This document shows, piece after piece, positions 5,910-44,974 of a stretch of DNA of 47,487 nt. Source of the DNA: Octopus bimaculoides (taxonomy: Eukaryota). The stretch spans positions 122,833,891 through 122,881,377 of the forward strand of contig NC_068981.1 in the NCBI RefSeq assembly GCF_001194135.2. Direction: 5' to 3'. Every line of letters starts with the position of its first letter. The first letter of the stretch is position 1. Both the position numbers and the translations under genes were made by a program. A model generated the notes under the pieces. The model was not told the origin of the DNA. It saw only the letters and a list, made by a program, of their open reading frames with translations, and searched no databases.

Positions 5910-7069
5910 GAACACACAAAGAAATAAGGAGAAAAACAAGGGGAAAAAATATAAATGTAGTGGTCAGTGATCTATCATGGCGAATGATGGACAGAAGGTT
6001 CACACAGGAGAGCTAAGGAAAAGCGGAGATAACAAAGGGGAAAGAATGGTGAACCGAAATACGACGAGCTGTGTGTGTGTTAGAGAATGTTGGTGATCTT
6101 AACGTATGTATGTGTGTATGTAGGTGTGAAAAAGTGGGGAAGGGAGTTGGTCGTTGCTAGTGTGTGCGTGGTGGTGTGTTGTGAAGTGATGTGTTGTGTG
6201 ATATGGTGTAGCGTGGTGTGATGTGAGGGTGTTGGGAGGTGGGAGTTTGGAGGTGGGGAAGGCGAAGGCGGGGGAGATGAGAATGGCGAAAGCATGTGCG
6301 GAGTGTGGGTTAGGCTGAGGGTGGGGGTAGAGGTAGGGGTACGTGGGTAGGCAGAGGTTGGGGTGGGTGTAAGGGATTGGATGGGGTNNNNNNNNNNNNN
6401 NNNNNNNNNNNNNNNNNNNNNNNNNNNNNNNNNNNNNNNNNNNNNNNNNNNNNNNNNNNNNNNNNNNNNNNNNNNNNNNNNNNNNNNNNNNNNNNNNNNN
6501 NNNNNNNNNNNNNNNNNNNNNNNNNNNNNNNNNNNNNNNNNNNNNNNNNNNNNNNNNNNNNNNNNNNNNNNNNNNNNNNNNNNNNNNNNNNNNNNNNNNN
6601 NNNNNNNNNNNNNNNNNNNNNNNNNNNNNNNNNNNNNNNNNNNNNNNNNNNNNNNNNNNNNNNNNNNNNNNNNNNNNNNNNNNNNNNNNNNNNNNNNNNN
6701 NNNNNNNNNNNNNNNNNNNNNNNNNNNNNNNNNNNNNNNNNNNNNNNNNNNNNNNNNNNNNNNNNNNNNNNNNNNNNNNNNNNNNNNNNNNNNNNNNNNN
6801 NNNNNNNNNNNNNNNNNNNNNNNNNNNNNNNNNNNNNNNNNNNNNNNNNNNNNNNNNNNNNNNNNNNNNNNNNNNNNNNNNNNNNNNNNNNNNNNNNNNN
6901 NNNNNNNNNNNNNNNNNNNNNNNNNNNNNNNNNNNNNNNNNNNNNNNNNNNNNNNNNNNNNNNNNNNNNNNNNNNNNNNNNNNNNNNNNNNNNNNNNNNN
7001 NNNNNNNNNNNNNNNNNNNNNNNNNNNNNNNNNNNNNNNNNNNNNNNNNNNNNNNNNNNNNNNNNNNNN

Positions 7070-8467: not shown

Positions 8468-8630
8468 GAAACGAAAGACAAAGACAGGTCAGGGAACATA
8501 AAACTGGTGTATTAACTTCACGCTCGGGAAGAATTCTAGCCTACGCTCTTCGACAAAAAAGGAGAAAGGGTGAAACAAAAGGGAAAGAGAAATATGTGCA
8601 GGTATTAACGGTTCAACAAGCTGAAATATA
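8468..8630 (-). mobile_element. Solo terminus of the F2/PLE family with a truncated HHR motif
   Basis: ACGAAAGACAAAGACAGG...GTATTAACTTCACGCTCGGGAA...AGCCTACGCTCTTCGAC is homologous to 5800-5905. The GAAAC-stem III part is deleted. Confidence 0.7.
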
Positions 8631-8651
8631 TATATATATATATATATATAT

Positions 8652-8922
8652 AAGCAATGTTAATTCTCTAAATGAAGTATTAACAGTAACTGCACGATAA
8701 AGTGTAGTATATTGCCACTTAAGTGTGGCTGACCCCTAGGGGTGGATGTTACTGTTGCTTTTAGCCCCAGGAGGACATCTCCTCCAGCTGGCTTATCGAC
8801 ACACGACTGTGTCCTGTTTGCCAAGGGAGTTATCCCTCTCACCACGACCAGCAGCACGAACGTATCCGGATTTCAGGGTTATTTCCCTTCTTCGGCGTTC
8901 GACAGCTGATGACCTTGGTGAG
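8652..8922 (-). mobile_element. HHR-bearing non-coding repeat F1, left copy (ends at gap)
   Basis: 8699-8922 matches the reverse complement of about 9573-9796 with no difference seen by eye. It starts directly after (TA)n. Confidence 0.8.
8857..8901 (-). ncRNA. Minimal type I hammerhead ribozyme motif (F1)
   Basis: Reverse complement of the motif at 9594-9638, same sequence. Confidence 0.7.
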
Positions 8923-9480
8923 NNNNNNNNNNNNNNNNNNNNNNNNNNNNNNNNNNNNNNNNNNNNNNNNNNNNNNNNNNNNNNNNNNNNNNNNNNNNNN
9001 NNNNNNNNNNNNNNNNNNNNNNNNNNNNNNNNNNNNNNNNNNNNNNNNNNNNNNNNNNNNNNNNNNNNNNNNNNNNNNNNNNNNNNNNNNNNNNNNNNNN
9101 NNNNNNNNNNNNNNNNNNNNNNNNNNNNNNNNNNNNNNNNNNNNNNNNNNNNNNNNNNNNNNNNNNNNNNNNNNNNNNNNNNNNNNNNNNNNNNNNNNNN
9201 NNNNNNNNNNNNNNNNNNNNNNNNNNNNNNNNNNNNNNNNNNNNNNNNNNNNNNNNNNNNNNNNNNNNNNNNNNNNNNNNNNNNNNNNNNNNNNNNNNNN
9301 NNNNNNNNNNNNNNNNNNNNNNNNNNNNNNNNNNNNNNNNNNNNNNNNNNNNNNNNNNNNNNNNNNNNNNNNNNNNNNNNNNNNNNNNNNNNNNNNNNNN
9401 NNNNNNNNNNNNNNNNNNNNNNNNNNNNNNNNNNNNNNNNNNNNNNNNNNNNNNNNNNNNNNNNNNNNNNNNNNNNNNNN

Positions 9481-9798
9481 TAGAGAATTAACATTGCTTG
9501 TTTTCACCTTTTCAATATCAGTGAAGAATGCCACTGGAAAAGAAGATATAAGATTTTGCCAGGTTTTTCTCTCTCACCAAGGTCATCAGCTGTCGAACGC
9601 CGAAGAAGGGAAATAACCCTGAAATCCGGATACGTTCGTGCTGCTGGTCGTGGTGAGAGGGATAACTCCCTTGGCAAACAGGACACAGTCGTGTGTCGAT
9701 AAGCCAGCTGGAGGAGATGTCCTCCTGGGGCTAAAAGCAACAGTAACATCCACCCCTAGGGGTCAGCCACACTTAAGTGGCAATATACTACACTTTAT
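9481..9798 (+). mobile_element. HHR-bearing non-coding repeat F1, right (inverted) copy
   Basis: Inverted copy of the left arm. Its start TAGAGAATTAACATTGCTT is the reverse complement of 8652-8670, indicating a circularly permuted or tandem unit. It ends in (TA)n. Confidence 0.8.
9594..9638 (+). ncRNA. Minimal type I hammerhead ribozyme motif (F1)
   Basis: CGAACG-CCGAAGA-AGGG-AAATAA-CCCT-GAAA-TCCGGA-TA-CGTTCG gives a 6-bp stem I, core CcGAAGA (U4>C), a 4-bp stem II, GAAA, a palindromic stem III (ATCCGGAT) and an AUA cleavage triplet ending at 9632. Confidence 0.72.
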
Positions 9799-9905
9799 AT
9801 ATATATATATATTATATAAACATACATATACGTATATATATAATCACACACATACACACACACATACATGCACAAAAATGCACACACTCACACATATATA
9901 TATAT

Positions 9906-10060
9906 AACAAAAACGAAAGACGAAGACAGATGTGTAAACAACAGACAAGAGTATTAGTTTCACGCTCGCGATGGTGAGAAAGTCTTCTACATTTCGAGCC
10001 TACGCTCTTCAACGGATAGAACTTTAGTAGCTAGCGGTCAATCATGGCGATCACGCTCAT
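9906..10060 (-). mobile_element. Solo terminus of the F2/PLE family with HHR-like motif (9984-10021)
   Basis: Minus strand TTCTAT-CCGTTGA-A-GAGC-GTAG-GCTC-GAAA-TG-TA-GAAG. Homologous to 5795-5980 and abuts (TA)n at about 9896-9905. Confidence 0.7.
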
Positions 10061-14800: not shown

Positions 14801-16343
14801 GAAAATCCACCATGCATTCATGCATATAGCATATCAGTTGCTATTGTATAATCCAGGAGGTTACCTTCAACAAACTTGCTGCGGGCAGAGGCGATTTGAA
14901 AGTTGAAATTCCACTATGAGTAATCATGCGACATGTTTATAAACAAGACTCAAGTATAGACAGCATCTAATTATTGAAAGTAGAATGAAATAGGAACTAA
15001 AAATAATTTAGCAAACTCCAGTCTTTAATGTGTATGATATATATGTGTGTGTGTATGTATGTATGTATGTATGTATGTATGTATGAGTTGATAACAGACA
15101 GGAAGTGACGTCCCACACATTTTAGAAGGAGTTGCATGTATTATTCAATACTTTCTTGACTTGATTCCCTGCAATTTAGAGTTTCGTAGGCTCGTGGAAG
15201 GAGCCTACCCTGTCAAGATGTCTGTCCTGATAGGCTCGTTAAATGAGCCTTCGAAATCTAAGCAGCATGGGGCTGAGTCTAACTCAGTAAATTTATACAT
15301 GTACATATGCATCTATACACACACATATACCTACGTATAAACTACTTTGAATACATATATCTCTAAATTCATATGTAGCAATATAGTGCTATGCACACTA
15401 TCTATAGAGTACCCTGTACACTCTCTCTAAATACACATTTTGCATACCTGGCTATTTCGATATACTTACAAACATACATGCGTACTTACATGCATAAATA
15501 TGTACATATACACACACATACATGCTAACATACATACATGCAAACATATATACATGCATGCATAACTACACACTTATGTCGATCACTAGCATCGAATTTT
15601 CAAACATAAATGACTATTACTTTATATTAATGCACACAAGAAATGTTGAATCAATTATAAGGTGTTATGTTACTAATGTGCCTTTGTAAGTACATGAAAG
15701 TAGGATCATTAATTAAGAGTTATACCTTTTAAATTAACCTCTTTATTAGTTAGAACGAATATTACTCGAGCTTAAGTTTAGAGTTTCAAAACGTTACTTC
15801 CTAAGTAATTTCGAATTTTTATGGTCGGTGGAATGAAACGGTTTTATGACTCCTCTAAATACATCCATACACGGAATTTATCTGCCTGTAATCAAACGTA
15901 GATAGCATGCACGGTCTCTATTCTTCTTATATATAAATACACTAATGGACATATACATACTCTTATACATATATTTACATATGCGTTTGTGTAAAAGAAA
16001 GTTATACATATATATATNNNNNNNNNNNNNNNNNNNNNNNNNNNNNNNNNNNNNNNNNNNNNNNNNNNNNNNNNNNNNNNNNNNTATATATATATATATA
16101 TATAATATATATAATATATATAATATGTAATATGTGTATATGTGTAGGGGAGAGTGAGTGTGTGTGTGTGTGTGTGTGTGTGCGTGCGTGTGTGTGATAT
16201 TTTTTATACGCTTGCTTATTTTTTATACATGCGTTGTGTGCATAGGTATATGTTAATTGACGTACGTATGTGAAGGTGAAAATTTCATCGTTTCTTTCTC
16301 ATTCAAAAAGAAGTAATCCAATTTTATACAACTTAATTCATGT

Positions 16344-16983
16344 AGTAAAGATTGTTTGCTAACATAACATGGTAGTCCTGGACTAATGTTGCTGTAATTT
16401 AGCCCCAGGAGACATCGTCTCCACCTGACTATACAACACGATCTGTGTCCTTATATTTTCGAGCAAGGGAATCTAGCACCCCCACTCAGCTCAAAACAAT
16501 ATCTGTGTATCTCGATTTCTGGTTTATTTCTCTTCATCAGCACAGAATAATTGTTCCGTTAGAGGTGGCGCTGTCAAATTCCCGTTCGTAATATATAGTT
16601 TTCAAAGTGACAACTAGTCACTGATTTATAAATTAGAAAGTTACTATTTGCGTATACAATTCTCCTGTTTAATTTTTAGTCGTCCTGATAAACGAACAGT
16701 AGTTAGTAAGTTGACTGTTAAAGCTGAGATTTGTATAAAATGAAAAATATTATACTTAAAAATGCGGTACATAGATGAAGGTTACCATATCACTATCAAA
16801 AGTGTTCAAAAACTCTTTAAAAGTTTGAGAATAATTAGTATCTGTTTGACAAAACAAATATTTGTCAAACATAACATGAATATGCTCCGCATTTAGACTA
16901 TGGATTAAGTTAGAAAATTACTATTTTTAAATCTCATAACGTGAGATATTCAGTACCAGTACTTTGGAGTAAAGATTGTTTGC
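16344..16983 (-). mobile_element. Diverged F1-family element, one about 624-nt monomer plus a 16-nt terminal direct repeat
   Basis: AGTAAAGATTGTTTGC occurs at 16344 and 16968. 16387-16450 is homologous to 8746-8815 (ATGTT.CTGT...TTAGCCCCAGGA...CTGTGTCCT). HHR at 16502-16546. Confidence 0.7.
16502..16546 (-). ncRNA. Minimal type I hammerhead motif (F1, diverged copy)
   Basis: TCTGTG-CTGATGA-AGAG-AAATAA-ACCA-GAAA-TCGAGA-TA-CACAGA has the canonical CUGAUGA core and a perfect 6-bp stem I of different sequence from the 9594 copy. Stems II and III are decayed. Confidence 0.65.
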
Positions 16984-17351
16984 CAGGACTGCCATGTTAT
17001 GTTTGCAAACAATCTTTACTCCAAAGTACTGTTGTTGAATATCTCACGTTGTGAGATTTAAAAATAATAATTTTCTAACTTAATCCATATTCTAAAAGCG
17101 CAGCATATTAATGTTATGTTTGACAAATATTTGTTTTGTCAAACGGATACTAATTATTCTCAAACTTTTAAAGAGTTTTTGAACACTTTTGATAGTGATA
17201 TGGTAACCTTCATCTAGGTACCGCATTTTTAAGTATAATATTTTTGATTTTATGAAAATCTCAGCTTTAACAGTCAACTTACTAACTACTGTTCGTTTAT
17301 CAGGGTGACTTAAAATTAAACAGGAGAATTGTATACGCAAATGATAGCTTT
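16637..17351. repeat. Long inverted repeat (about 345-bp arms, about 21-bp spacer)
   Basis: 16637-16983 is the reverse complement of 17005-17351 with scattered mismatches, in gap-free sequence. 16983-17020 is also the inverse of 16344-16381. Confidence 0.95.
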
Positions 17352-19361
17352 ATTCCTCATTGAACAGTAAGTCTTTATTGGCATCCGAACATTTCATCTT
17401 GTTTTTAACTTAACATATTACAAAACCACTTGGTTTTGCAAATATAAAAATTCCCAATCGCTTCATTAACATGTATTATTAAGTCAGAAGCGTTCAAGTA
17501 AACACATGAAAACTATTTCCTCCAAAACATTGCCTGAAGAACACTTTAATATAAACTTGAAACTTCAGTTGCAAAGAAAGTGTATAATGAATCATTGCTT
17601 TTAAGGAAACGTTAATCAAATATATGCAAAAACAAAAAGGCATTACAGAATTAAGAATGTCAATAACAATAACGTCGTACCAAGCAGGATATAAAGCAAA
17701 AATTTTAATAAACATAAATGTAAGAGAACATGACTTCTTATCAATGAAATTGAATAATGCAGCGTTTAGTCGAAAACATTATAAAATTGGTTGGGTGGCA
17801 AGTAATGGAAGAAACTTACAAACCTGCAGGCAGCCTAGATGGCAAATTCACTTTAAACGTTGCTTTCTAAATTACTGTTCGTGAATGTCTCTGTATTGCT
17901 GGAAGGAATACTCACATGCTATGAAACACGACTTACGTGTAATTGCCATAAGTAAAAATAATAAACATTTTAAATAGAGAAAATTTGAAAAAATAAACGA
18001 TACGAATACATCAAAATGAAATGTTGTAAAAGAAAATATTTCACAAGTATTTAATACATCCTCCAATATGAAAATGACATAACATAAATTATTTAGACTT
18101 CAAAAGAGTTCTCTGAATGCTTTTAACACTTCTTTTCTAATGAAATGTCAATAGTATGAAATGAGAGTAAAAGAAAGTCACTCTGGTACGCTGTTAGTGA
18201 TTCATTTATGTCATTCTAATACGCTTTAATAGATTTATACTTTTAGTATGATCAATTCTCAGGCTAAACTCCATCATAGATGTGTTATGCTTATTTACAT
18301 ATGCAGCTTGATATAAGATGTTTCGATACTGAAAAAAACGGAAAGAAATTTTAATCTGATAGATAATAATACAAATTCATGACATGTATTTATATGATTT
18401 CTATACCATTCCATCCACTAGAACCAAAATAATAACGATGAAAATATTACTCTATAATTAAAACATACTAACACTATAGAAATGTTATATGATTTCATCA
18501 TTCATAATTATATGGCAGTAAATTTCAAAAATATGTACAAATAATATGCCTATGTGTGTGCGCATATACAGCTTAACATATGGATAAATGTTCTTAAGTC
18601 ACAGAACATTTAATACTCAATATTTGCAGAGATTGTATTAAATGTCGAAACTAGTATATATGTACAAAACGTATAGGTAATTACCAACATACATAAAGAC
18701 CCAAGACATAATTCAGCTGTTATAATGTTCTATATGCGTTTACTTTGCTTTTCTTTGTGATTCACTTCACTACATGGTATCTAGAGCACATTTCATCTAC
18801 TATAATCTCCAGTTGACCAAAGCTGTGTAAATGAAACAACGGGCAGAAACGATGTGCATTTAAGCGTGTGGATATGCGTGTTGATAGATGGAATCTCTCC
18901 TTTCTCACACACTGTATGTATATATATATACATACATACATATACATATATATAAGCTTATTAAGAACTCATCTACTACAATACACGAAACAAGCCTGGT
19001 AATACAATAAAATAGACTTTGACCTAATTAGATAGAATCCAAACCTTCGGCCAGCAACTGGTGTGTAGCTGAGGTCAACCAAAGAGTTCTACAAACATAT
19101 CAGAATTCAGATTCAAACTAACTTTCATTCGTTTCATCCTGGATCCTAACCACTATGCAAATAACTGAATTCCGTTCGCTTCGTGTAAAGCTTGGTGAAA
19201 GACCCTGAACGTAGCTGCACAGAAAATAATGCCCGGTTGCATATGCAAGTGTTCATACCATAAAAATATGACGCATGACAAACTGTAAAATAAAAAGAAA
19301 TAAATTTTGAGGATGTACCTATCCCCGCGTTCTTTATCACTATAATTATTGCATATATATA

Positions 19362-20967: not shown

Positions 20968-22045
20968 NNNNNNNNNNNNNNNNNNNNNNNNNNNNNNNNN
21001 NNNNNNNNNNNNNNNNNNNNNNNNNNNNNNNNNNNNNNNNNNNNNNNNNNNNNNNNNNNNNNNNNNNNNNNNNNNNNNNNNNNNNNNNNNNNNNNNNNNN
21101 NNNNNNNNNNNNNNNNNNNNNNNNNNNNNNNNNNNNNNNNNNNNNNNNNNNNNNNNNNNNNNNNNNNNNNNNNNNNNNNNNNNNNNNNNNNNNNNNNNNN
21201 NNNNNNNNNNNNNNNNNNNNNNNNNNNNNNNNNNNNNNNNNNNNNNNNNNNNNNNNNNNNNNNNNNNNNNNNNNNNNNNNNNNNNNNNNNNNNNNNNNNN
21301 NNNNNNNNNNNNNNNNNNNNNNNNNNNNNNATATATATATATATATATATATATATATACGGTATAATATATATAACATAGGGATTCAAATGAAGTCATT
21401 CGTTAAACACTTCCCACAGTTTCACCAATTCTCTCATTCACTACTCTATTACACTTCAAACACGCACAACTAGTTGCTTGGCATCATGCATAACCAGTTG
21501 TATAGCAGAGCAGAGTACATTTGCATGTAATAAGTTTTCATATTGCAAAGAAAGTACTTCGGTGTATTTTGCGTTATATGAATGTGTTTGATAATGGAAT
21601 ATACGCTCTGGAGTAATAATTCTCAATAATATTTGTTTGCGATATACGATCATATTTCCAATCGTAACTTATTTACATTATCTCCAGCACTAAAGCACTT
21701 AAAATATAAATTAACAGATATTTAATTCTTAAATATTCATTTTCAAATGCCTAAGATATGAGTCACGTTAATAGATATGCACGCAGATTAATCGAAAATA
21801 ATATTCCTCACGAGAAAACTATTATCCAGAAACCCTATGATATGTGCAGATTTTATGTAATAGATACATATGTGTGAGGGTCTCCGTATATATAATATAC
21901 ATACACATGCTCACACACGTGCATGCACGCACGCACGCACACATAATGGAGTCTTCCGTGTTTGTGTTTAATGATTTATGTATGTTTCTTTATGTAAGTT
22001 TATTTTTAAGTACACGTACATTGATATACATGTCATCTCTTACAG

Positions 22046-22236
22046 GTATCTACTATGGTATCACCATATCAATTGTATCATTTGCCACGGCCATGACAGT
22101 ATTCACCTTAAATATTCACCACAAGGGAGCACGTGGACACGAAGTCCCCATTATCATCAAGAAGATCTGTTTCGGTATTTTAGCGAAGATTTTCTGCATG
22201 CGTCTGGAGAAGCCTAACAATAAGTCATCAAACGTG
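22046..22236 (+). CDS. Internal exon of a nicotinic acetylcholine receptor / Cys-loop channel subunit (M3 helix and start of M3-M4 loop), alpha7/alpha9-10-like
   Basis: Acceptor TGTCATCTCTTACAG at 22045 (phase 1). Peptide (G)IYYGITISIVSFATAMTVFTLNIHHKGARGHEVPIIIKKICFGILAKIFCMRLEKPNNKSSNV shows M3, LNIHH and the conserved post-M3 P. Donor GTG|GTAGGT at 22237 (phase 0), with an alternative AG|GTATAT at 22241. Confidence 0.92.
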
Positions 22237-23869
22237 GTAGGTATATTATGATTTAATGTTGTAGTTTTTGTTGTCTGCTTTTTTATGCCTCTGTCGATGT
22301 TTATAGCAGATATGATATTTGATGGGGTTAATAATGTTACTCTTGCTCCTACATTTTGGACTAAGTTTGGTCGTGTTCTATTTTTTGCAGGCTACACTGT
22401 AATATTCCTTATTTACTTGTTTGATTAACAACAGATCGAGACATAGGGCTATGTTATTAAAAAGATATTAATTTATTATTATCAGTCAAATGAACAACAT
22501 CACTTATGAAAACATAAATGTAACTCAATCAATATTTGTTTTTAAGGGCTTTAAATGTAGAAAGATGAAGTTAGCTAATTTCAGCATCATTTTAAATATC
22601 ACATAATGTATGCACAATCCTCATAAAATTTCATTTGTAAACACAATAAAAGATATTGAAAGAAATGTTAGTACATAAATTTTTTGCTTAATTCTAAAAA
22701 CTGAGTTCCCTCTCAAATTTGGCGAAGTACCCTCTCAAAACAATTACATTAGTTAGAATTTTACGTTAGTATAATATTTTTCCAAGAAAAAGTGTGTTTA
22801 ACAAGGAAATTATAGATGAAATCAGACTAGAAGGAAAACTTATGCAATCAGACAATGAAAATTCCTTAAGTTTCATATGCTTTGCAACATAACTTTAGCA
22901 TTAATTTGCCGTTTAATTCTTATTCCAATTGTTTTCCTCATTTACAATTGCCTCATTTTCTCTCAGCTTGTAAGACATCTGCTGTGTATAATACAAATAT
23001 AAACAATTTTATTCGTCTCTACAAGCACAGATCAATCCACTACCTGAATGAGACGTCATCAATCATGACATCGCTAAAAGAAAAGTTATACATCACTATC
23101 GAAAACAATATTGAAAAGTAATTTTATCATTCGCAGAGAAAATTTTCAAAGCAGATAAAAATGTATCAGTTTAGGAGGCAATAGTATTGAAATAAATGTT
23201 ACTTCAAATACATCTGTGACTTATTAGAGAACAGTATTACTAACAATCCAATATCAATTATATAGATGGATCGAGTTAATATTTTTTTCGCTTAGCATAA
23301 TGAAAATAATTTTCTTTTGATGTTATTTGTTTTACTTGATATAAGGGAAAAGGCTTTATCGAAATAGTGGTCTAAGATATATTCCTTAGTAACAACTATC
23401 CCAGTGATTGAGGAGATAGTTTCTTCTTCAGCAAGCAAGTGCAGAAGGAGAAACAATCTTATGGTGTAAAACAGTATGCCATGAAAGCATCCAGTTCACT
23501 ATAGTCCTTTAAATAGTTAAATTCAATACCATCCATTTGATGGACAGGGGCAAGCACAGAAATCACAGGTTAGTAACACACTTTTGATTTAACTACCTAA
23601 ATATGAATACATATTCATACTTAATTACCGTACACCACACACACGCATAAATACATACATACATATACTCACACGCATGCACGGAAATGTATGAAAATCT
23701 TGTAACTGAATACTCTATGCTAAATTTAGGACCTTATATATTAAATTTTCTCTATCAAATGTATTGATAGAGAATGTATTGATTTCTCTTTTATTTTCTT
23801 CGGGGTATTTCTGGGTATTTAAGAATGCTCCAAACACACTACCAGCTATCAGCGTGTCTCTGAATCAAT

Positions 23870-26379: not shown

Positions 26380-28665
26380 AGTAGTTTACCAAGCCTAAAA
26401 GTGCATGTAACAATTTGCCTTTCTTTGGGGGAGGGATAGCCCGTATTGCTGTTGTCCTTGATGGATTTAGTCTTCGTCCCCTTTCGTCAATTACTTGAGC
26501 AAAATATTTGATTTTTTCATCAAAAATTCACGCTTTTCATCTGTTACTCTAATCCCGCATTCATATATTTTTCCGAATACTTTTTGATAGTTTGGAAGTG
26601 TTTCTCACTGACTCACACCTTATCAAATTATCTTCGAGATAAACGAAAGCGAAGTCGCAATCATTCAACATTGCGTCCATCACTTGTTTGAATATGGTAG
26701 GAGCCACTTTTACTCAAAAAGAAGCCGCTTGAATTTATACAATCTTCGGTGTATTGGTTGTTAAAAAGTGTACACAGTCTTCCTCTGTCTGTAGGCAGGC
26801 CTTTGAGAGGTCTAGGTTCGAGAAACTTTGTCCTCCATTTAGTAGGGGTTTGGTAATGGATAATAGTCTTCGACTAAACAGTCATTTAATCCAGTTGAAA
26901 AGTCCGCACACACTCTTTCTTTTTTTCTTTCTCTACACAGTCTGAATGGTCGACTTTTTCAATCTTAGCTAGTCTGTCTAGTCTTTCAAGCTCTTTATTG
27001 ACCTGGTCGAACGCTGCAAATGGCACGTTCCATTTGAGCCTAAAACCTGTTGTTGCCTTTTCTTTTACCGCGATCCTCATTTTTGTTTTAGTGCAACATC
27101 TAATACTCCCAAAAAACATTTGGAAACACTTAAAAAAATTGTTTGTCTCAGTTGTTCGACTTCATTCGAATTTTTGACTGTGCCAACTACATTTTCACAG
27201 AGAACACTAATGGGGATATCCCACAATTTAAATAGTTCCATGCATTCTGTGCCAAATCGGTTTAGTGATTTTTGTCAACACATAAACGATTGTTCCTTTC
27301 ATTTCACCTCCATAAGTTATGTGCAAATACATTCGTCGATGAAATATAATTTCTTTCCTCCAACACCATATGCTACTTTATTTGATTTAAATAATTTCGG
27401 CTTACCGTTTTGTCATATCGCCTCATCTATGATAGTGATGTTACTACCCGTGTTTAAATGCATGTTGACACTAGTTGTTTTGATTATCACCCTTATGAAT
27501 TTTCTGTTCGCATACAAACATTTAACTCTGATGACAAACTATTCTTTTCTCGTTTGGTCCAGTTCTCCTCATCTTAGTTCTGCAGTGCGATTTAATGTGT
27601 CCTGTTTTCCCACAACGAAAACACTTTACTGTTTTGAACGGACACGCTTGTCTCAGATGCCTATCACGGCATGCCGTACAAGGGTTTATCTTCTGCTCTA
27701 TATCATATTTGTTATGAAACTATTTATCTGTGCCCCGACTTTTCTACACTGGTTTTATCTGTAAACAATATCTGCGTTGGGTTTTGTCTGTGTCTTACTT
27801 TTAATATCATATCACATTCTTCTGACGTTTCTGGAGAGTTATATCCTGGTTCATTTCCAGTTTTGCGAGAATTTTCCTTCTGAATTCTCTGTCCTTTCCT
27901 AAGTCCCTTAAGAAAAATCAGGCACTTAAACGAGTTTGGAGTTAGTTTATCCAGTTTAAATATCCCGCACTCTCTGTTCACTCTACTCGCATATATGGTA
28001 AAGTCTTCGTCATCTCTTTTCTCAGTGTTCAAACACTTCCAACGTATGTTGAACAACGATGTTTTTTCACTAAATGCCCTACGTAAAATATCAATAATGT
28101 TTGTGAAATTTACGTCAGAAACTTTCTTAGGCAATATAACGTTGCAGTATTTTTCGTGCCCTGTCGTCGCCAGTTTCTTCAGAATTAGACATGTTTTCAT
28201 TTCGTCTGTCTAGTCTTAGCATTATCTTTCGAAAATTTGTTCAAATCTTCGGTAATATACCTCGAAGGTGATTCTTTCTTCCGGATCATATTTAAATTCA
28301 TTTATTGAATTTACTACATGGTCTAGCGAAAACGTATTTTCCGGTTTGGTTACCAACTTCATTAGTTGTAGCATTTGTTACTATAACATGTGTTGTTGTT
28401 CATGCTGTTCTTTTAGTTGTTGCTGTTGTTTTTGCAAGTCAACTGGCCCTCTAACAAGTTTTCCATGATTTAACCGGTTTTTCGTAAAATATGTACAAAA
28501 AGAATGTTTGTTACTCCACTGTCAAGTTTTTAATTTCTTCGAGTGAAAACATTTTCAACGCTGTCCGCGTGAATTATTTATATCCTCTTCACCACTATAA
28601 TAATGTCAATCCTCGTTCATTTGTATGTTGTCGGTACTGTAATATTCGTGTCGCCACAATTACGT
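26380..28665 (-). mobile_element. Decayed Ty3/Gypsy LTR retrotransposon internal region (gag, protease, RT; 3' part missing)
   Basis: gag ATG near 28466 with EFKYDPEERITFEVYYRRFE and ILPKKVSD...SLFNIRWKCL...FKCLIFLKGL. Zinc knuckle CFRCGKTGHIKSHC at about 27581-27623, protease LNTGSNITII, RT VPFAAFDQVNKELERL, and GVKVAPTIFKQVMDAML...AFVYLED. PBS-like TGGCGAC at 28650-28656. Confidence 0.92.
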
Positions 28666-28938: not shown

Positions 28939-29620
28939 NNNNNNNNNNNNNNNNNNNNNNNNNNNNNNNNNNNNNNNNNNNNNNNNNNNNNNNNNNNNNN
29001 NNNNNNNNNNNNNNNNNNNNNNNNNNNNNNNNNNNNNNNNNNNNNNNNNNNNNNNNNNNNNNNNNNNNNNNNNNNNNNNNNNNNNNNNNNNNNNNNNNNN
29101 NNNNNNNNNNNNNNNNNNNNNNNNNNNNNNNNNNNNNNNNNNNNNNNNNNNNNNNNNNNNNNNNNNNNNNNNNNNNNNNNNNNNNNNNNNNNNNNNNNNN
29201 NNNNNNNNNNNNNNNNNNNNNNNNNNNNNNNNNNNNNNNNNNNNNNNNNNNNNNNNNNNNNNNNNNNNNNNNNNNNNNNNNNNNNNNNNNNNNNNNNNNN
29301 NNNNNNNNNNNNNNNNNNNNNNNNNNNNNNNNNNNNNNNNNNNNNNNNNNNNNNNNNNNNNNNNNNNNNNNNNNNNNNNNNNNNNNNNNNNNNNNNNNNN
29401 NNNNNNNNNNNNNNNNNNNNNNNNNNNNNNNNNNNNNNNNNNNNNNNNNNNNNNNNNNNNNNNNNNNNNNNNNNNNNNNNNNNNNNNNNNNNNNNNNNNN
29501 NNNNNNNNNNNNNNNNNNNNNNNNNNNNNNNNNNNNNNNNNNNNNNNNNNNNNNNNNNNNNNNNNNNNNNNNNNNNNNNNNNNNNNNNNNNNNNNNNNNN
29601 NNNNNNNNNNNNNNNNNNNN

Positions 29621-30230: not shown

Positions 30231-30444
30231 ATGAAAGAGTTAACTCTTTTTCAATATTCAAATGACTTCCAATCCATACCGTTGATTGTTTCCAACGTTG
30301 ATTATTCTGCGGCACTCATACTGTATTATTTCTTATTCGGTGGAAATATCTTTGATGAGAAAACTTAAGGAATTATTATTGGGATACTTAAGTCAGAATT
30401 ACAGAGAAATAGTGTCACAGAATGTGAATTTTTGTGTAGGTGAG

Positions 30445-30570
30445 AAAAGAAGAAGAGGAAGTGGAAGAAGAAGAAGAAGAAGAAGAAGAAGAAGAAGAAG
30501 AAGAAGAAGAAGAAGAAGAGGAAGTAATAGTAGTAGTAGGTGGAGGAGGAGGAGGAGGAGAAGAAGAAAC

Positions 30571-30626
<56 letters not shown>

Positions 30627-30653
30627 GAGAAGAAGAAGAAGGAGAAGAAGAAG

Positions 30654-30685
<32 letters not shown>

Positions 30686-30722
30686 GGAGGAGGAGGTGGA
30701 GGAGGAGAAGAATGAGGCGGAG
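30445..30722. repeat. Compound trinucleotide microsatellite (AAG)n/(AGT)n/(GGA)n
   Basis: Direct reading. It produces the spurious poly-R/E/S/V ORFs. Confidence 0.97.
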
Positions 30723-31459
30723 NNNNNNNNNNNNNNNNNNNNNNNNNNNNNNNNNNNNNNNNNNNNNNNNNNNNNNNNNNNNNNNNNNNNNNNNNNNNNN
30801 NNNNNNNNNNNNNNNNNNNNNNNNNNNNNNNNNNNNNNNNNNNNNNNNNNNNNNNNNNNNNNNNNNNNNNNNNNNNNNNNNNNNNNNNNNNNNNNNNNNN
30901 NNNNNNNNNNNNNNNNNNNNNNNNNNNNNNNNNNNNNNNNNNNNNNNNNNNNNNNNNNNNNNNNNNNNNNNNNNNNNNNNNNNNNNNNNNNNNNNNNNNN
31001 NNNNNNNNNNNNNNNNNNNNNNNNNNNNNNNNNNNNNNNNNNNNNNNNNNNNNNNNNNNNNNNNNNNNNNNNNNNNNNNNNNNNNNNNNNNNNNNNNNNN
31101 NNNNNNNNNNNNNNNNNNNNNNNNNNNNNNNNNNNNNNNNNNNNNNNNNNNNNNNNNNNNNNNNNNNNNNNNNNNNNNNNNNNNNNNNNNNNNNNNNNNN
31201 NNNNNNNNNNNNNNNNNNNNNNNNNNNNNNNNNNNNNNNNNNNNNNNNNNNNNNNNNNNNNNNNNNNNNNNNNNNNNNNNNNNNNNNNNNNNNNNNNNNN
31301 NNNNNNNNNNNNNNNNNNNNNNNNNNNNNNNNNNNNNNNNNNNNNNNNNNNNNNNNNNNNNNNNNNNNNNNNNNNNNNNNNNNNNNNNNNNNNNNNNNNN
31401 NNNNNNNNNNNNNNNNNNNNNNNNNNNNNNNNNNNNNNNNNNNNNNNNNNNNNNNNNNN

Positions 31460-44233: not shown

Positions 44234-44974
44234 TAGATANNNNNNNNNNNNNNNNNNNNNNNNNNNNNNNNNNNNNNNNNNNNNNNNNNNNNNNNNNNNN
44301 NNNNNNNNNNNNNNNNNNNNNNNNNNNNNNNNNNNNNNNNNNNNNNNNNNNNNNNNNNNNNNNNNNNNNNNNNNNNNNNNNNNNNNNNNNNNNNNNNNNN
44401 NNNNNNNNNNNNNNNNNNNNNNNNNNNNNNNNNNNNNNNNNNNNNNNNNNNNNNNNNNNNNNNNNNNNNNNNNNNNNNNNNNNNNNNNNNNNNNNNNNNN
44501 NNNNNNNNNNNNNNNNNNNNNNNNNNNNNNNNNNNNNNNNNNNNNNNNNNNNNNNNNNNNNNNNNNNNNNNNNNNNNNNNNNNNNNNNNNNNNNNNNNNN
44601 NNNNNNNNNNNNNNNNNNNNNNNNNNNNNNNNNNNNNNNNNNNNNNNNNNNNNNNNNNNNNNNNNNNNNNNNNNNNNNNNNNNNNNNNNNNNNNNNNNNN
44701 NNNNNNNNNNNNNNNNNNNNNNNNNNNNNNNNNNNNNNNNNNNNNNNNNNNNNNNNNNNNNNNNNNNNNNNNNNNNNNNNNNNNNNNNNNNNNNNNNATA
44801 TATGTATATATATATATCGATAAGTAGATTGTGTGTGCGCGTGTGTGTGTACCCTCGAAGGTACATGCATATACATGTACATGTCTTTTTTTATAGATTG
44901 GTACACGCATATATACATATATATATATATATTTGTATGTCTGTGTGTATGCATATCTATACATACAAGAACAC

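What the first reader, a model, noticed from the sequence alone, without database searches (positions are those of the whole stretch)
8652..9798. Retrozyme-like repeat: about 344-nt circularly permuted non-coding monomer carrying a minimal hammerhead ribozyme
Seen: 9594-9638 folds as a type I HHR (stem I CGAACG/CGTTCG, core CCGAAGA, stem II AGGG/CCCT, GAAA, palindromic ATCCGGAT stem III, AUA site). The right copy runs 9481-9796 (316 nt). The left copy supplies the next 28 nt (8671-8698) and then re-enters the 9481 start sequence, closing a 344-nt circle. There is no meaningful ORF, and the unit is rich in short hairpins and palindromes (GCCAC/GTGGC, ACCCCTAGGGGT, GGAGGA/TCCTCC, GACACA/TGTGTC, GGGA/TCCC). 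Known: minimal HHRs with palindromic stem III work as dimers in Penelope-like elements, and tandem HHR repeats of a few hundred nt ('non-LTR retrozymes') give circular RNAs in coral, mussel and axolotl. Inference: this is a cephalopod retrozyme or non-autonomous PLE family. I do not know of a description in octopus, but I could not search.
Basis: partly seen in the sequence, partly recalled or inferred. Interest (0 to 1): 0.82.

Follow-up and report, generated by a model that had tools for sequence, protein, structure and literature searches.

The report
Octopus hammerhead retrozyme-like repeat, inverted pair
A 344-base non-coding repeat carrying a hammerhead self-cleaving RNA motif sits as two mirror-image copies inside a (TA)n microsatellite of an octopus genome; it looks like a new member of the known "retrozyme"/Penelope-dependent class of small mobile elements, not a new kind of thing.

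Summary
The sequence features are real, but the layout differs from what the title implies. The two copies are reverse complements, not head-to-tail: 8697-8922 and 9573-9798 are 100% complementary over 226 nt, and the N gap lies at the centre of this inverted pair. Overlapping the two copies does close a 344-nt unit. One unit junction is visible, at 8652-8698.

The hammerhead at 9594-9638 has the canonical metazoan type I layout. Its best Rfam family is Hammerhead_HH9, far below threshold. It is not the PLE "minimal" type, and its core carries C at the conserved U4.

A diverged relative at 16502-16546 (- strand) has a canonical CUGAUGA core. Its helix I differs at 5 of 6 pairs, all compensated, but its helix II is degraded. 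That ungapped locus is also head-to-head, with just over one unit.

There is no ORF, GC is 45%, and the predicted fold is compact. Both outer ends, which are the 3' ends of the hammerhead strand, abut (TA)n. This matches non-LTR retrozymes and PLE-type insertion footprints.

Untested here: tandem multimers, circular RNA, cleavage and genome-wide consensus. No cephalopod DNA was searchable.

Verdict: new member of a known kind, of moderate interest.

The parts
8626..8652 (.). (TA)n microsatellite abutting the outer end of the left copy
   Evidence: TRF gives period 2, 13.5 copies, 100% matches.
8652..8922 (-). Left copy of the 344-nt unit. The hammerhead-sense strand is the - strand. It covers unit positions 93-344 plus 1-19 and runs into the gap.
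   Evidence: Inverted repeats I1 and I11. BLAST of the monomer matches 93-344 to 8922-8671 and 1-19 to 8670-8652, both at 100%.
8652..8698 (-). Unit junction and 'tail'. These are the 26-28 nt that follow the right copy's end point, plus the first 19 nt of the next unit. They are present only at this outer end.
   Evidence: This is the only head-to-tail junction visible in the finding.
8857..8901 (-). Hammerhead motif of the left copy, identical to the right one
   Evidence: My own descriptor scan. CM R1 scores 83.4 bits over 8850-8908.
8923..9480 (.). Assembly gap of nominal length 558 nt, at the centre of the inverted pair
9481..9798 (+). Right copy of the unit. The hammerhead-sense strand is the + strand. 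It covers unit positions 1-318 and ends at (TA)n.
9565..9665 (+). Long imperfect hairpin with the hammerhead at its tip, formed by helix I extended by about 21 further pairs
   Evidence: The fold of 9560-9670 gives -47.6 kcal/mol, z -5.2. Inverted repeat I8. The same layout is seen in the relative.
9594..9638 (+). Type I hammerhead motif. Helix I is CGAACG/CGTTCG, the core is CCGAAGA (U4C), helix II is AGGG-AAATAA-CCCT, followed by GAAA. Helix III is AT-CCGG-AT. The predicted cleavage site lies between 9632 and 9633.
   Evidence: Rfam Hammerhead_HH9 scores 19.5 bits, E 0.0054, on an 81-nt slice, matching the full model.
9796..9842 (.). (TA)n microsatellite abutting the outer end of the right copy
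   Evidence: TRF.
16341..16983 (-). Diverged relative (second family). It is one 624-nt unit plus a 19-nt terminal redundancy, within a single contig.
   Evidence: Direct repeat D5 has spacing 624, and inverted repeat I2 is 41 nt. Homology to the 344-nt unit is limited to the hammerhead block (z 7.4) and the block downstream of it (z 19.5).
16502..16546 (-). Hammerhead motif of the relative. Helix I is TCTGTG/CACAGA, the core is the canonical CTGATGA, helix II is degraded (AGAG...CCA), and helix III is ATCGAGAT.
   Evidence: CM R1 scores 79.1 bits by construction. There is no Rfam hit.
16983..17368 (+). Inverted partial copy of the relative, lying head-to-head with the - strand copy
   Evidence: Inverted repeat I1: arms 16620-16983 and 17005-17368, 364 nt, 92% complementary, with a 21-nt spacer.

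Best explanation
This is an insertion of a small non-coding retroelement of the hammerhead-bearing, Penelope-dependent kind: a non-LTR 'retrozyme', or equivalently a non-autonomous PLE derivative.

SHOWN:
- The unit is 344 nt with no ORF and 45% GC.
- It carries one type I hammerhead at the tip of a long hairpin.
- It is predicted to fold into a compact, highly paired RNA.
- Two copies lie head-to-head inside a (TA)n microsatellite, with the 3' ends of the hammerhead-sense strand pointing outwards.
- One copy runs 45 nt past the other's end point, across the unit junction.
- A diverged relative 7 kb away has the same architecture in ungapped sequence.

INFERRED (life cycle, by analogy with PMC7229834):
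1. Transcripts that hold more than one unit pair their hammerheads through the palindromic helix III.
2. They cleave after A17 (9632).
3. The 344-nt linear RNA is circularised by a host RtcB-type ligase.
4. The circle, or a multimer, is copied by the reverse transcriptase of an autonomous PLE. Its GIY-YIG endonuclease nicks (TA)n.
5. Priming from both nicks on a circular or multimeric template gives slightly more than unit-length, junction-spanning copies joined head-to-head.

This particular copy carries U4C in the catalytic core, so it is probably a weak or inactive ribozyme.
For: HAMMERHEAD
- All helices and 12 of the 13 core positions are present.
- The best Rfam family on the slice is Hammerhead_HH9, with a full-length match to the model layout.
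- A motif of this quality is not expected by chance: 0 of 300 randomisations.
- Against the relative, 7 pairs changed on both sides and are kept (5 in helix I, 2 in the outer helix). 90.6% of cells are paired, against 22-44% when partners are slid.
- A second hairpin also covaries at 2 pairs: GGAGGA/TCCTCC against GGAGAC/GTCTCC (read).
- The core and loop 2 are the best-conserved stretch between the two otherwise unalignable units.
- The predicted dimer is the double hammerhead with an 8-bp helix III.

RETROZYME-LIKE BODY
- No ORF. The protein databases hold only one spurious octopus entry.
- GC is 45%, and the circular fold has z about -6.
- The unit length lies within the 170-400 nt range, and GC is below 50%, as reported for metazoan retrozymes (PMC7229834).

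PLE-TYPE FOOTPRINT
- The copies are inverted with 3' ends outwards. There is a one-sided extension, both flanks are (TA)n, and the short-read assembly broke at the centre.
- Craig et al. 2021 describe exactly these traits for PLE insertions (PMC8557442).
- The ungapped relative shows the same head-to-head layout, with arms only 92% alike, so that layout is not a scaffolding artefact.
- A 2026 preprint argues that vertebrate retrozymes derive from PLE pLTRs (10.64898/2026.07.22.740005).
Against: - Neither hammerhead is fully canonical. The finding's copy has U4C, and the relative has a degraded helix II.
- The Rfam score is far below threshold, and the slice was chosen after the fact.
- Covariation rests on only two independent sequences.
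- No two hammerheads in the same orientation are visible, so this locus as read cannot release a unit-length RNA.
- No tandem multimer is visible.
- No PLE reverse transcriptase or endonuclease ORF is in the window, and no partner element was identified.
- The (TA)n bias is documented best for Naiads, which lack hammerheads, and only hypothesised for Neptune.
- The inverted arrangement of the finding itself depends on the orientation of a 1.85-kb contig between two gaps.
- No cephalopod genome or transcriptome could be searched, so copy number, consensus and expression are unknown.
Confidence: 0.66

Rival explanations
1. The two arms are the terminal repeat (pLTR) parts of a 5'-truncated autonomous Penelope-like element. 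Its coding part is hidden in the gap or was lost. On this view it is not a dedicated non-autonomous family.
For: PLE pLTRs carry hammerheads, and PLE insertions are typically 5'-truncated, partially tandem and inverted. Retrozymes and pLTRs are homologous in Xenopus. The gap length is only nominal.
Against: The unit closes on itself in 344 nt, leaving no room for an ORF. The ungapped relative closes in 624 nt and also has no ORF of 90 aa or more. The hammerhead has the canonical type I layout, not the minimal PLE layout of a long helix II with no helix III.
Confidence: 0.12
2. This is an ordinary repeat, either a satellite fragment or a foldback element, that holds a decayed fossil hammerhead with no present ribozyme role. 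The mirror-image layout would then come from a DNA-level inversion, or from a mis-oriented or duplicated contig in a short-read scaffold.
For: The core carries U4C, and helix II of the relative is degraded. The arms are 100% identical and flank an N gap, and the left contig is only 1.85 kb. The Rfam hit is sub-threshold. A TA target is also typical of some DNA transposons (my own knowledge).
Against: The outer ends are not symmetrical: 45 nt are present on one side only, which does not fit terminal inverted repeats or one contig placed twice. The relative shows the same head-to-head layout inside one contig, with diverged arms. Compensatory changes show past selection on the RNA helices.
Confidence: 0.17
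3. The hammerhead-like motif is a chance match in a hairpin-rich repeat.
For: Hammerhead descriptors are short and match by chance in large genomes. The relaxed descriptor is expected 0.067 times per window.
Against: A motif of the observed quality appeared in 0 of 300 randomisations. An independent diverged copy keeps the core and loop 2, and compensates 5 of the 6 helix I pairs.
Confidence: 0.04

Closest known systems
Metazoan non-LTR retrozymes (Cervera & de la Pena 2020, PMC7229834; e.g. the 350-390-bp repeats of Mytilus galloprovincialis)
   Same: Both have a type I hammerhead with a 6-bp helix I, a 4-bp helix II and a short palindromic helix III. Both are non-coding units of a few hundred nt (here 344) with GC below 50%, a highly self-paired predicted RNA, more-than-unit-length junction-spanning copies and a molluscan host. 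As in the mussel, the archetypal loop 1/loop 2 contacts are not evident.
   Different: No head-to-tail array of complete monomers is visible; the copies are head-to-head. The core carries U4C. Expression and circularity are untested. The relative's unit of 624 nt is longer than the reported 170-400 nt.
Penelope-like element insertions (Craig et al. 2021, PMC8557442; Cervera & de la Pena 2014, PMC4209133)
   Same: The insertion has an inverted adjacent copy, a one-sided extension ('tail', here 45 nt against the 30-40 reported) and an insertion site in (TA)n. It broke a short-read assembly, and it carries a hammerhead in the repeated part.
   Different: There is no RT or GIY-YIG ORF. The hammerhead is the canonical type I, not the 'min-HHR' of metazoan PLEs. 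The (TA)n bias is documented mainly for Naiads, which lack hammerheads.
Rfam Hammerhead_HH9 (RF02275) and newt/axolotl satellite hammerheads
   Same: They share the secondary-structure layout: an outer helix, an internal loop, a 6-bp helix I, a 4-bp helix II with an A-rich 6-nt loop, and a short helix III. Like the amphibian motifs, this one is predicted to need a dimer.
   Different: It scores 19.5 bits against a gathering score of 52. It has U4C, A10.1-U11.1 instead of G-C, and a smaller loop 1. HH9 is a conserved single-copy intronic motif in amniotes, not a repeat.

Membership tests
Hammerhead ribozyme, type I | Conserved core: C3 U4 G5 A6 N7 G8 A9, G12 A13 A14, A15.1-U16.1, H17 | tested here: inconclusive
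   The finding's copy meets 12 of 13 positions; U4 is C. The relative at 16502-16546 meets 13 of 13. U4C is reported to lower activity considerably but still to allow viroid infectivity (PMC3088659).
Hammerhead ribozyme, type I | Three helices around the core, open at helix I, supported by covariation | tested here: met
   Helix I has 6 bp, of which 5 pairs are compensated between the two copies. Helix II has 4 bp in the finding but is broken at 3 of 4 pairs in the relative. The 2 bp of helix III are invariant. Only two independent sequences were available.
Hammerhead ribozyme, type I | Match to a curated covariance model at its gathering score | tested here: not met
   There is no hit at gathering score in the window, and none at E<=10 over 1.45 kb. 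An 81-nt slice gives HH9 at 19.5 bits against 52.
Hammerhead ribozyme, type I | Self-cleavage at the predicted site | not testable with these tools
   This needs in vitro transcription of monomer and dimer constructs.
Non-LTR retrozyme | Type I hammerhead inside a short (about 170-400 bp) non-coding repeat of low GC | tested here: met
   The unit is 344 nt, GC is 45%, and the longest open stretch is 83 codons.
Non-LTR retrozyme | Head-to-tail tandem copies (dimers to multimers), each with a hammerhead | tested here: inconclusive
   One unit junction is visible (8652-8698), and the relative is 1.03 units long. No two hammerheads in the same orientation are seen, and the gap hides about 558 nt.
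Non-LTR retrozyme | Expressed as linear and circular unit-length RNAs | not testable with these tools
   No octopus RNA data were reachable.
Non-LTR retrozyme | Predicted RNA is highly self-paired | tested here: met
   The circular MFE is -115.3 kcal/mol, z -6.1 for the + strand and -5.5 for the - strand.
Penelope-like element (autonomous) | ORF with a PLE-type reverse transcriptase and a GIY-YIG endonuclease | tested here: not met
   There is no such ORF in the unit or anywhere in the window. The gap content is unknown.
Penelope-like element (insertion footprint) | Partial tandem plus an adjacent inverted copy, a one-sided tail and a microsatellite target | tested here: met
   against the description in PMC8557442. 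For the finding itself, this depends on the scaffold orientation being right.

The most novel reading that the evidence does not exclude
The two loci may preserve the integration footprint of circular retrozyme RNA copied by a PLE enzyme. The footprint would be:
- copies that start a few to 41 nt before the unit junction, go once round and end near a common point (...TACTACA; unit position 311-318 in one family and the homologous site in the other);
- copies joined head-to-head, in the relative at a 12-nt palindrome within the unit (TGTTTGCAAACA);
- insertion into (TA)n.

If general across the genome, this would be direct structural evidence for site-specific initiation and two-sided target-primed reverse transcription of retrozyme circles. 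That step has so far only been postulated.
Probability: 0.3. Interest if true: 0.55.

Novelty: new member of a known kind. Interest (0 to 1): 0.38.

Why it matters
It would extend hammerhead-bearing non-autonomous retroelements (retrozymes) to octopus. No description there was found in the searchable literature. For cephalopods, the only related report found was a count of Rfam Hammerhead_1 hits in the giant squid genome paper (PMC6962438).

The head-to-head, slightly-over-unit-length copies inside (TA)n add structural support to the idea that retrozymes are moved by Penelope-like elements. That idea has been argued so far mainly from co-occurrence and pLTR homology.

Practical points:
- Such inverted insertions break short-read assemblies.
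- They generate spurious gene models. UniRef A0A0L8IHK6_OCTBM is an antisense translation of this repeat.

Tried and rejected
- Rfam at gathering score on the whole window, and at E<=10 on 8500-9950: no hammerhead. Only the 81-nt slice gave a weak HH9 hit.
- I tried to find other genomic copies through spurious protein calls. The antisense 81-aa ORF found one Octopus bimaculoides UniRef entry, for which no contig is on record. A concatenate of all other frames found nothing.
- Exact-protein look-ups of neighbouring window ORFs, meant to fetch the locus from another assembly, found nothing.
- A degenerate DNA pattern covering both hammerheads had 0 matches in JGI metagenome contigs and in IMG/VR. 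No searchable collection holds cephalopod DNA.
- A covariance model built from the two hammerheads found no further copy in the window. The next best match scored 11.9 bits, E 1.4.
- The apparent similarity of the relative's 3' flank (16340-16223) and 5' part (16664-16561) to the 344-nt unit, seen in a gapped alignment, is not above shuffles (z 1.3 and 0.3). I dropped it.
- The RNAalifold structure downstream of the hammerhead rests on a shifted MAFFT alignment, so I did not use it.
- I considered a foldback or TA-targeting DNA transposon and rejected it because the outer ends are not inverted repeats of each other.

Full report
**1. The gap and the layout**

One search shows the region, and one search lists its repeats. 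The two copies flanking the N run 8923-9480 are reverse complements of each other.
- Arms 8697-8922 and 9573-9798 are 226 nt long and 100% complementary.
- The 19 nt at 8652-8670 are the reverse complement of 9481-9499.

So the letters on the two sides of the gap are not continuous in any head-to-tail sense. The gap sits at the centre of an inverted pair.

The gap length is nominal, since 558 and 682 each occur twice among the ten gaps of the window. As a control I compared the two flanks of every gap.
- Only this gap has inverted identical flanks.
- Eight of the other nine gaps have simple TA or AC repeats at an edge.

The left contig (7070-8922) is only 1.85 kb and lies between two gaps. Its orientation in the scaffold cannot be checked here.

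**2. The unit**

I overlapped the right copy (+ strand, 9481-9798) with the reverse complement of the left copy (8922-8652).

The hammerhead-sense strand is + for the right copy and - for the left copy. Both 3' ends therefore point outwards and both 5' ends point into the gap.
- The right copy ends at unit position 318, against (TA)n at 9796-9842.
- The left copy runs 45 nt further, across the unit junction and into the first 19 nt of the next unit. It then meets (TA)n at 8626-8652.

This is the only head-to-tail junction visible in the finding.

The unit has no meaningful ORF. The longest stop-to-stop stretch in the circularised unit is 83 codons. GC is 45%. As a circle it is predicted to fold at -115.3 kcal/mol, with z -6.1 for the + strand and -5.5 for the - strand.

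**3. The hammerhead**

| Element | Sequence | Coordinates |
|---|---|---|
| Helix I, 5' strand | CGAACG | 9594-9599 |
| Core | CCGAAGA | 9600-9606 |
| Helix II | AGGG / CCCT, loop AAATAA | 9607-9620 |
| Core | GAAA | 9621-9624 |
| Helix III | AT-CCGG-AT | 9624-9631 |
| Cleavage-site base | A17 | 9632 |
| Helix I, 3' strand | CGTTCG | 9633-9638 |

Four qualifications apply.

- *The core.* It deviates from CUGANGA at the conserved U4, which is C here. Perreault et al. 2011 state that U4C considerably lowers activity in vitro but still permits viroid infectivity (PMC3088659).
- *The layout.* It is not 'minimal'. A 6-bp helix I, a 4-bp helix II and a 1-2-bp helix III capped by a small palindromic loop is what Cervera and de la Pena 2014 call the canonical metazoan type I motif. 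Their PLE 'min-HHR' has no helix III and a long helix II (PMC4209133).
- *Rfam.* It gives no hit at gathering score, and none at E<=10 over 1.45 kb. On an 81-nt slice the best family is Hammerhead_HH9: 19.5 bits against a gathering score of 52, E 0.0054 for that slice, matched over the full model. This includes an outer helix beyond an internal loop. That agrees on layout but is not a membership pass.
- *The long hairpin.* The motif sits at the tip of a long imperfect hairpin (9565-9665; -47.6 kcal/mol, z -5.2).

In the monomer, the active fold (-6.7 kcal/mol) loses to a fold that pairs core CCG with loop-3 CGG (-14.5). Two molecules are predicted to form the classical double hammerhead with an 8-bp helix III, at -33.9 against -29.0 for two monomers.

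A descriptor of the observed quality matched none of 300 randomised windows. A relaxed one is expected 0.067 times per window.

**4. A diverged relative in the same window**

BLAST of the unit against the window found a second locus on the - strand near 16384-16541. Its hammerhead lies at 16502-16546.
- The core is the canonical CTGATGA.
- Loop 2 and GAAA are the same as in the finding.
- Helix III is ATCGAGAT.
- Helix I is TCTGTG/CACAGA.

Counted on the alignment, 5 of the 6 helix I pairs and 2 of the 4 outer-helix pairs changed on both sides and stay paired. In all, 90.6% of cells are paired, against 22-44% when partners are slid. Six of 500 shuffles reach the observed values.

Helix II of the relative is degraded: 3 of its 4 pairs are broken. 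A further hairpin downstream also covaries at two pairs (GGAGGA/TCCTCC against GGAGAC/GTCTCC).

Homology between the two units is confined to the hammerhead block (z 7.4) and a block of about 110 nt after it (z 19.5). The rest does not align above shuffles.

So each copy has a different defect, and together they point to an ancestor with an intact motif under selection for RNA structure. The evidence rests on two independent sequences only. A covariance model built from them finds no further copy in the window.

**5. Architecture of the relative**

The relative lies within one contig. One search shows:
- inverted arms 16620-16983 and 17005-17368 (364 nt, 92% complementary, 21-nt spacer);
- a 19-41-nt direct redundancy at spacing 624.

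The - strand copy (16983 to 16341) is therefore one 624-nt unit plus 19 nt. A partial + strand copy (16983-17368) lies head-to-head with it. Both start just before the unit junction. The hammerhead-sense 3' ends again point outwards.

The join lies at a 12-nt palindrome of the unit itself (TGTTTGCAAACA). The - strand copy ends after ...TACTACA. This is homologous, within about 7 nt, to where the finding's right copy ends (...TACTACACTTTA).

Because the arms have diverged to 92% and there is no gap, this head-to-head layout is not a scaffolding artefact. That makes the same layout at the finding more credible.

**6. Comparison with what is known**

- Cervera and de la Pena 2020 define metazoan non-LTR retrozymes as type I hammerheads in non-coding tandem repeats of about 170-400 nt with GC below 50%. 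[quoted passage not shown] The mussel has about 5000 copies in 350-390-bp repeats (PMC7229834).
- Craig et al. 2021 describe PLE insertions as partial tandems. They often have an adjacent inverted 5'-truncated copy, a 30-40-bp tail at one end and a bias for microsatellites. The bias is (TA)n in Naiads and is proposed for Neptune. They note that such structures break short-read assemblies, and that cephalopods including Octopus carry Naiads (PMC8557442).
- A 2026 preprint argues that vertebrate retrozymes derive from PLE pLTRs (10.64898/2026.07.22.740005).

The finding fits these descriptions point by point, except that complete head-to-tail monomers, expression and cleavage are not shown.

**7. 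Host and prior description**

The only database relative of any reading frame of the unit is UniRef A0A0L8IHK6 of Octopus bimaculoides. It is a 54-aa 'uncharacterized protein' that is an antisense, frameshifted translation of another copy. This places the window in Octopus and shows at least one more genomic copy.

Full-text searches found no description of retrozymes or hammerheads in octopus. The giant squid genome paper lists 235 Rfam Hammerhead_1 hits without further analysis (PMC6962438).

No collection available here holds cephalopod DNA. Pattern scans of metagenome and viral contigs returned nothing. Copy number, consensus and arrays therefore could not be tested.

**8. Verdict**

- the copies are inverted, not tandem;
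- the hammerhead is the canonical type I, not the minimal type;
- the core carries U4C.

The best explanation is a retrozyme-type, PLE-dependent non-autonomous element inserted head-to-head into (TA)n, with confidence about 0.66.

The rivals are:
- a truncated PLE terminal repeat (0.12);
- a fossil motif in an ordinary repeat, with a layout due to DNA inversion or mis-scaffolding (0.17);
- a chance match (0.04).

It is a new member of a known kind, and interest is moderate.

Noticed in passing
window 16341-17368: A second, diverged hammerhead-bearing element lies within one contig. It has a 624-nt unit plus a 19-nt redundancy on the - strand, head-to-head with a 364-nt inverted partial copy (92% complementary). 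The join is at a 12-nt palindrome. It shares only the hammerhead and about 110 nt downstream with the finding's unit.
   Followed up: yes
UniRef A0A0L8IHK6_OCTBM (P0001); corresponds to window 8746-8907 (+): This 54-aa 'uncharacterized protein' of Octopus bimaculoides is an antisense translation of another copy of this repeat, with a frameshift. It is probably a spurious gene model.
   Followed up: partly
window 8469-8554 and 9911-10013: Direct repeats 75-90% alike lie on either side of the insertion. Each is preceded by a TG/CA/TA-rich microsatellite. They look like two old copies of a common SINE-like repeat, not a target-site duplication.
   Followed up: no
window gaps 6388-7069, 8923-9480, 28939-29620, 44240-44797 and six others: Gap lengths repeat (682 twice, 558 twice), so they are nominal. 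Eight of the nine gaps other than the finding's have TA or AC simple repeats at an edge.
   Followed up: yes
window 21844-22251 (+): This ORF has a weak match to the Pfam neurotransmitter-gated ion-channel transmembrane region (E 0.002, 18.9 bits, below the cut-off of 28.1). It may be an exon of a Cys-loop receptor gene, in which case the window would be genic.
   Followed up: partly
window 27724-28200 (-): This 158-aa ORF has a weak DUF7083 match (E 0.0003, below the cut-off). It is possibly a remnant of a retroelement gag-like protein.
   Followed up: no
window 30443-30712: A long (AGA)n / 15-mer repeat of about 80 triplets runs into gap 30723-31459.
   Followed up: no
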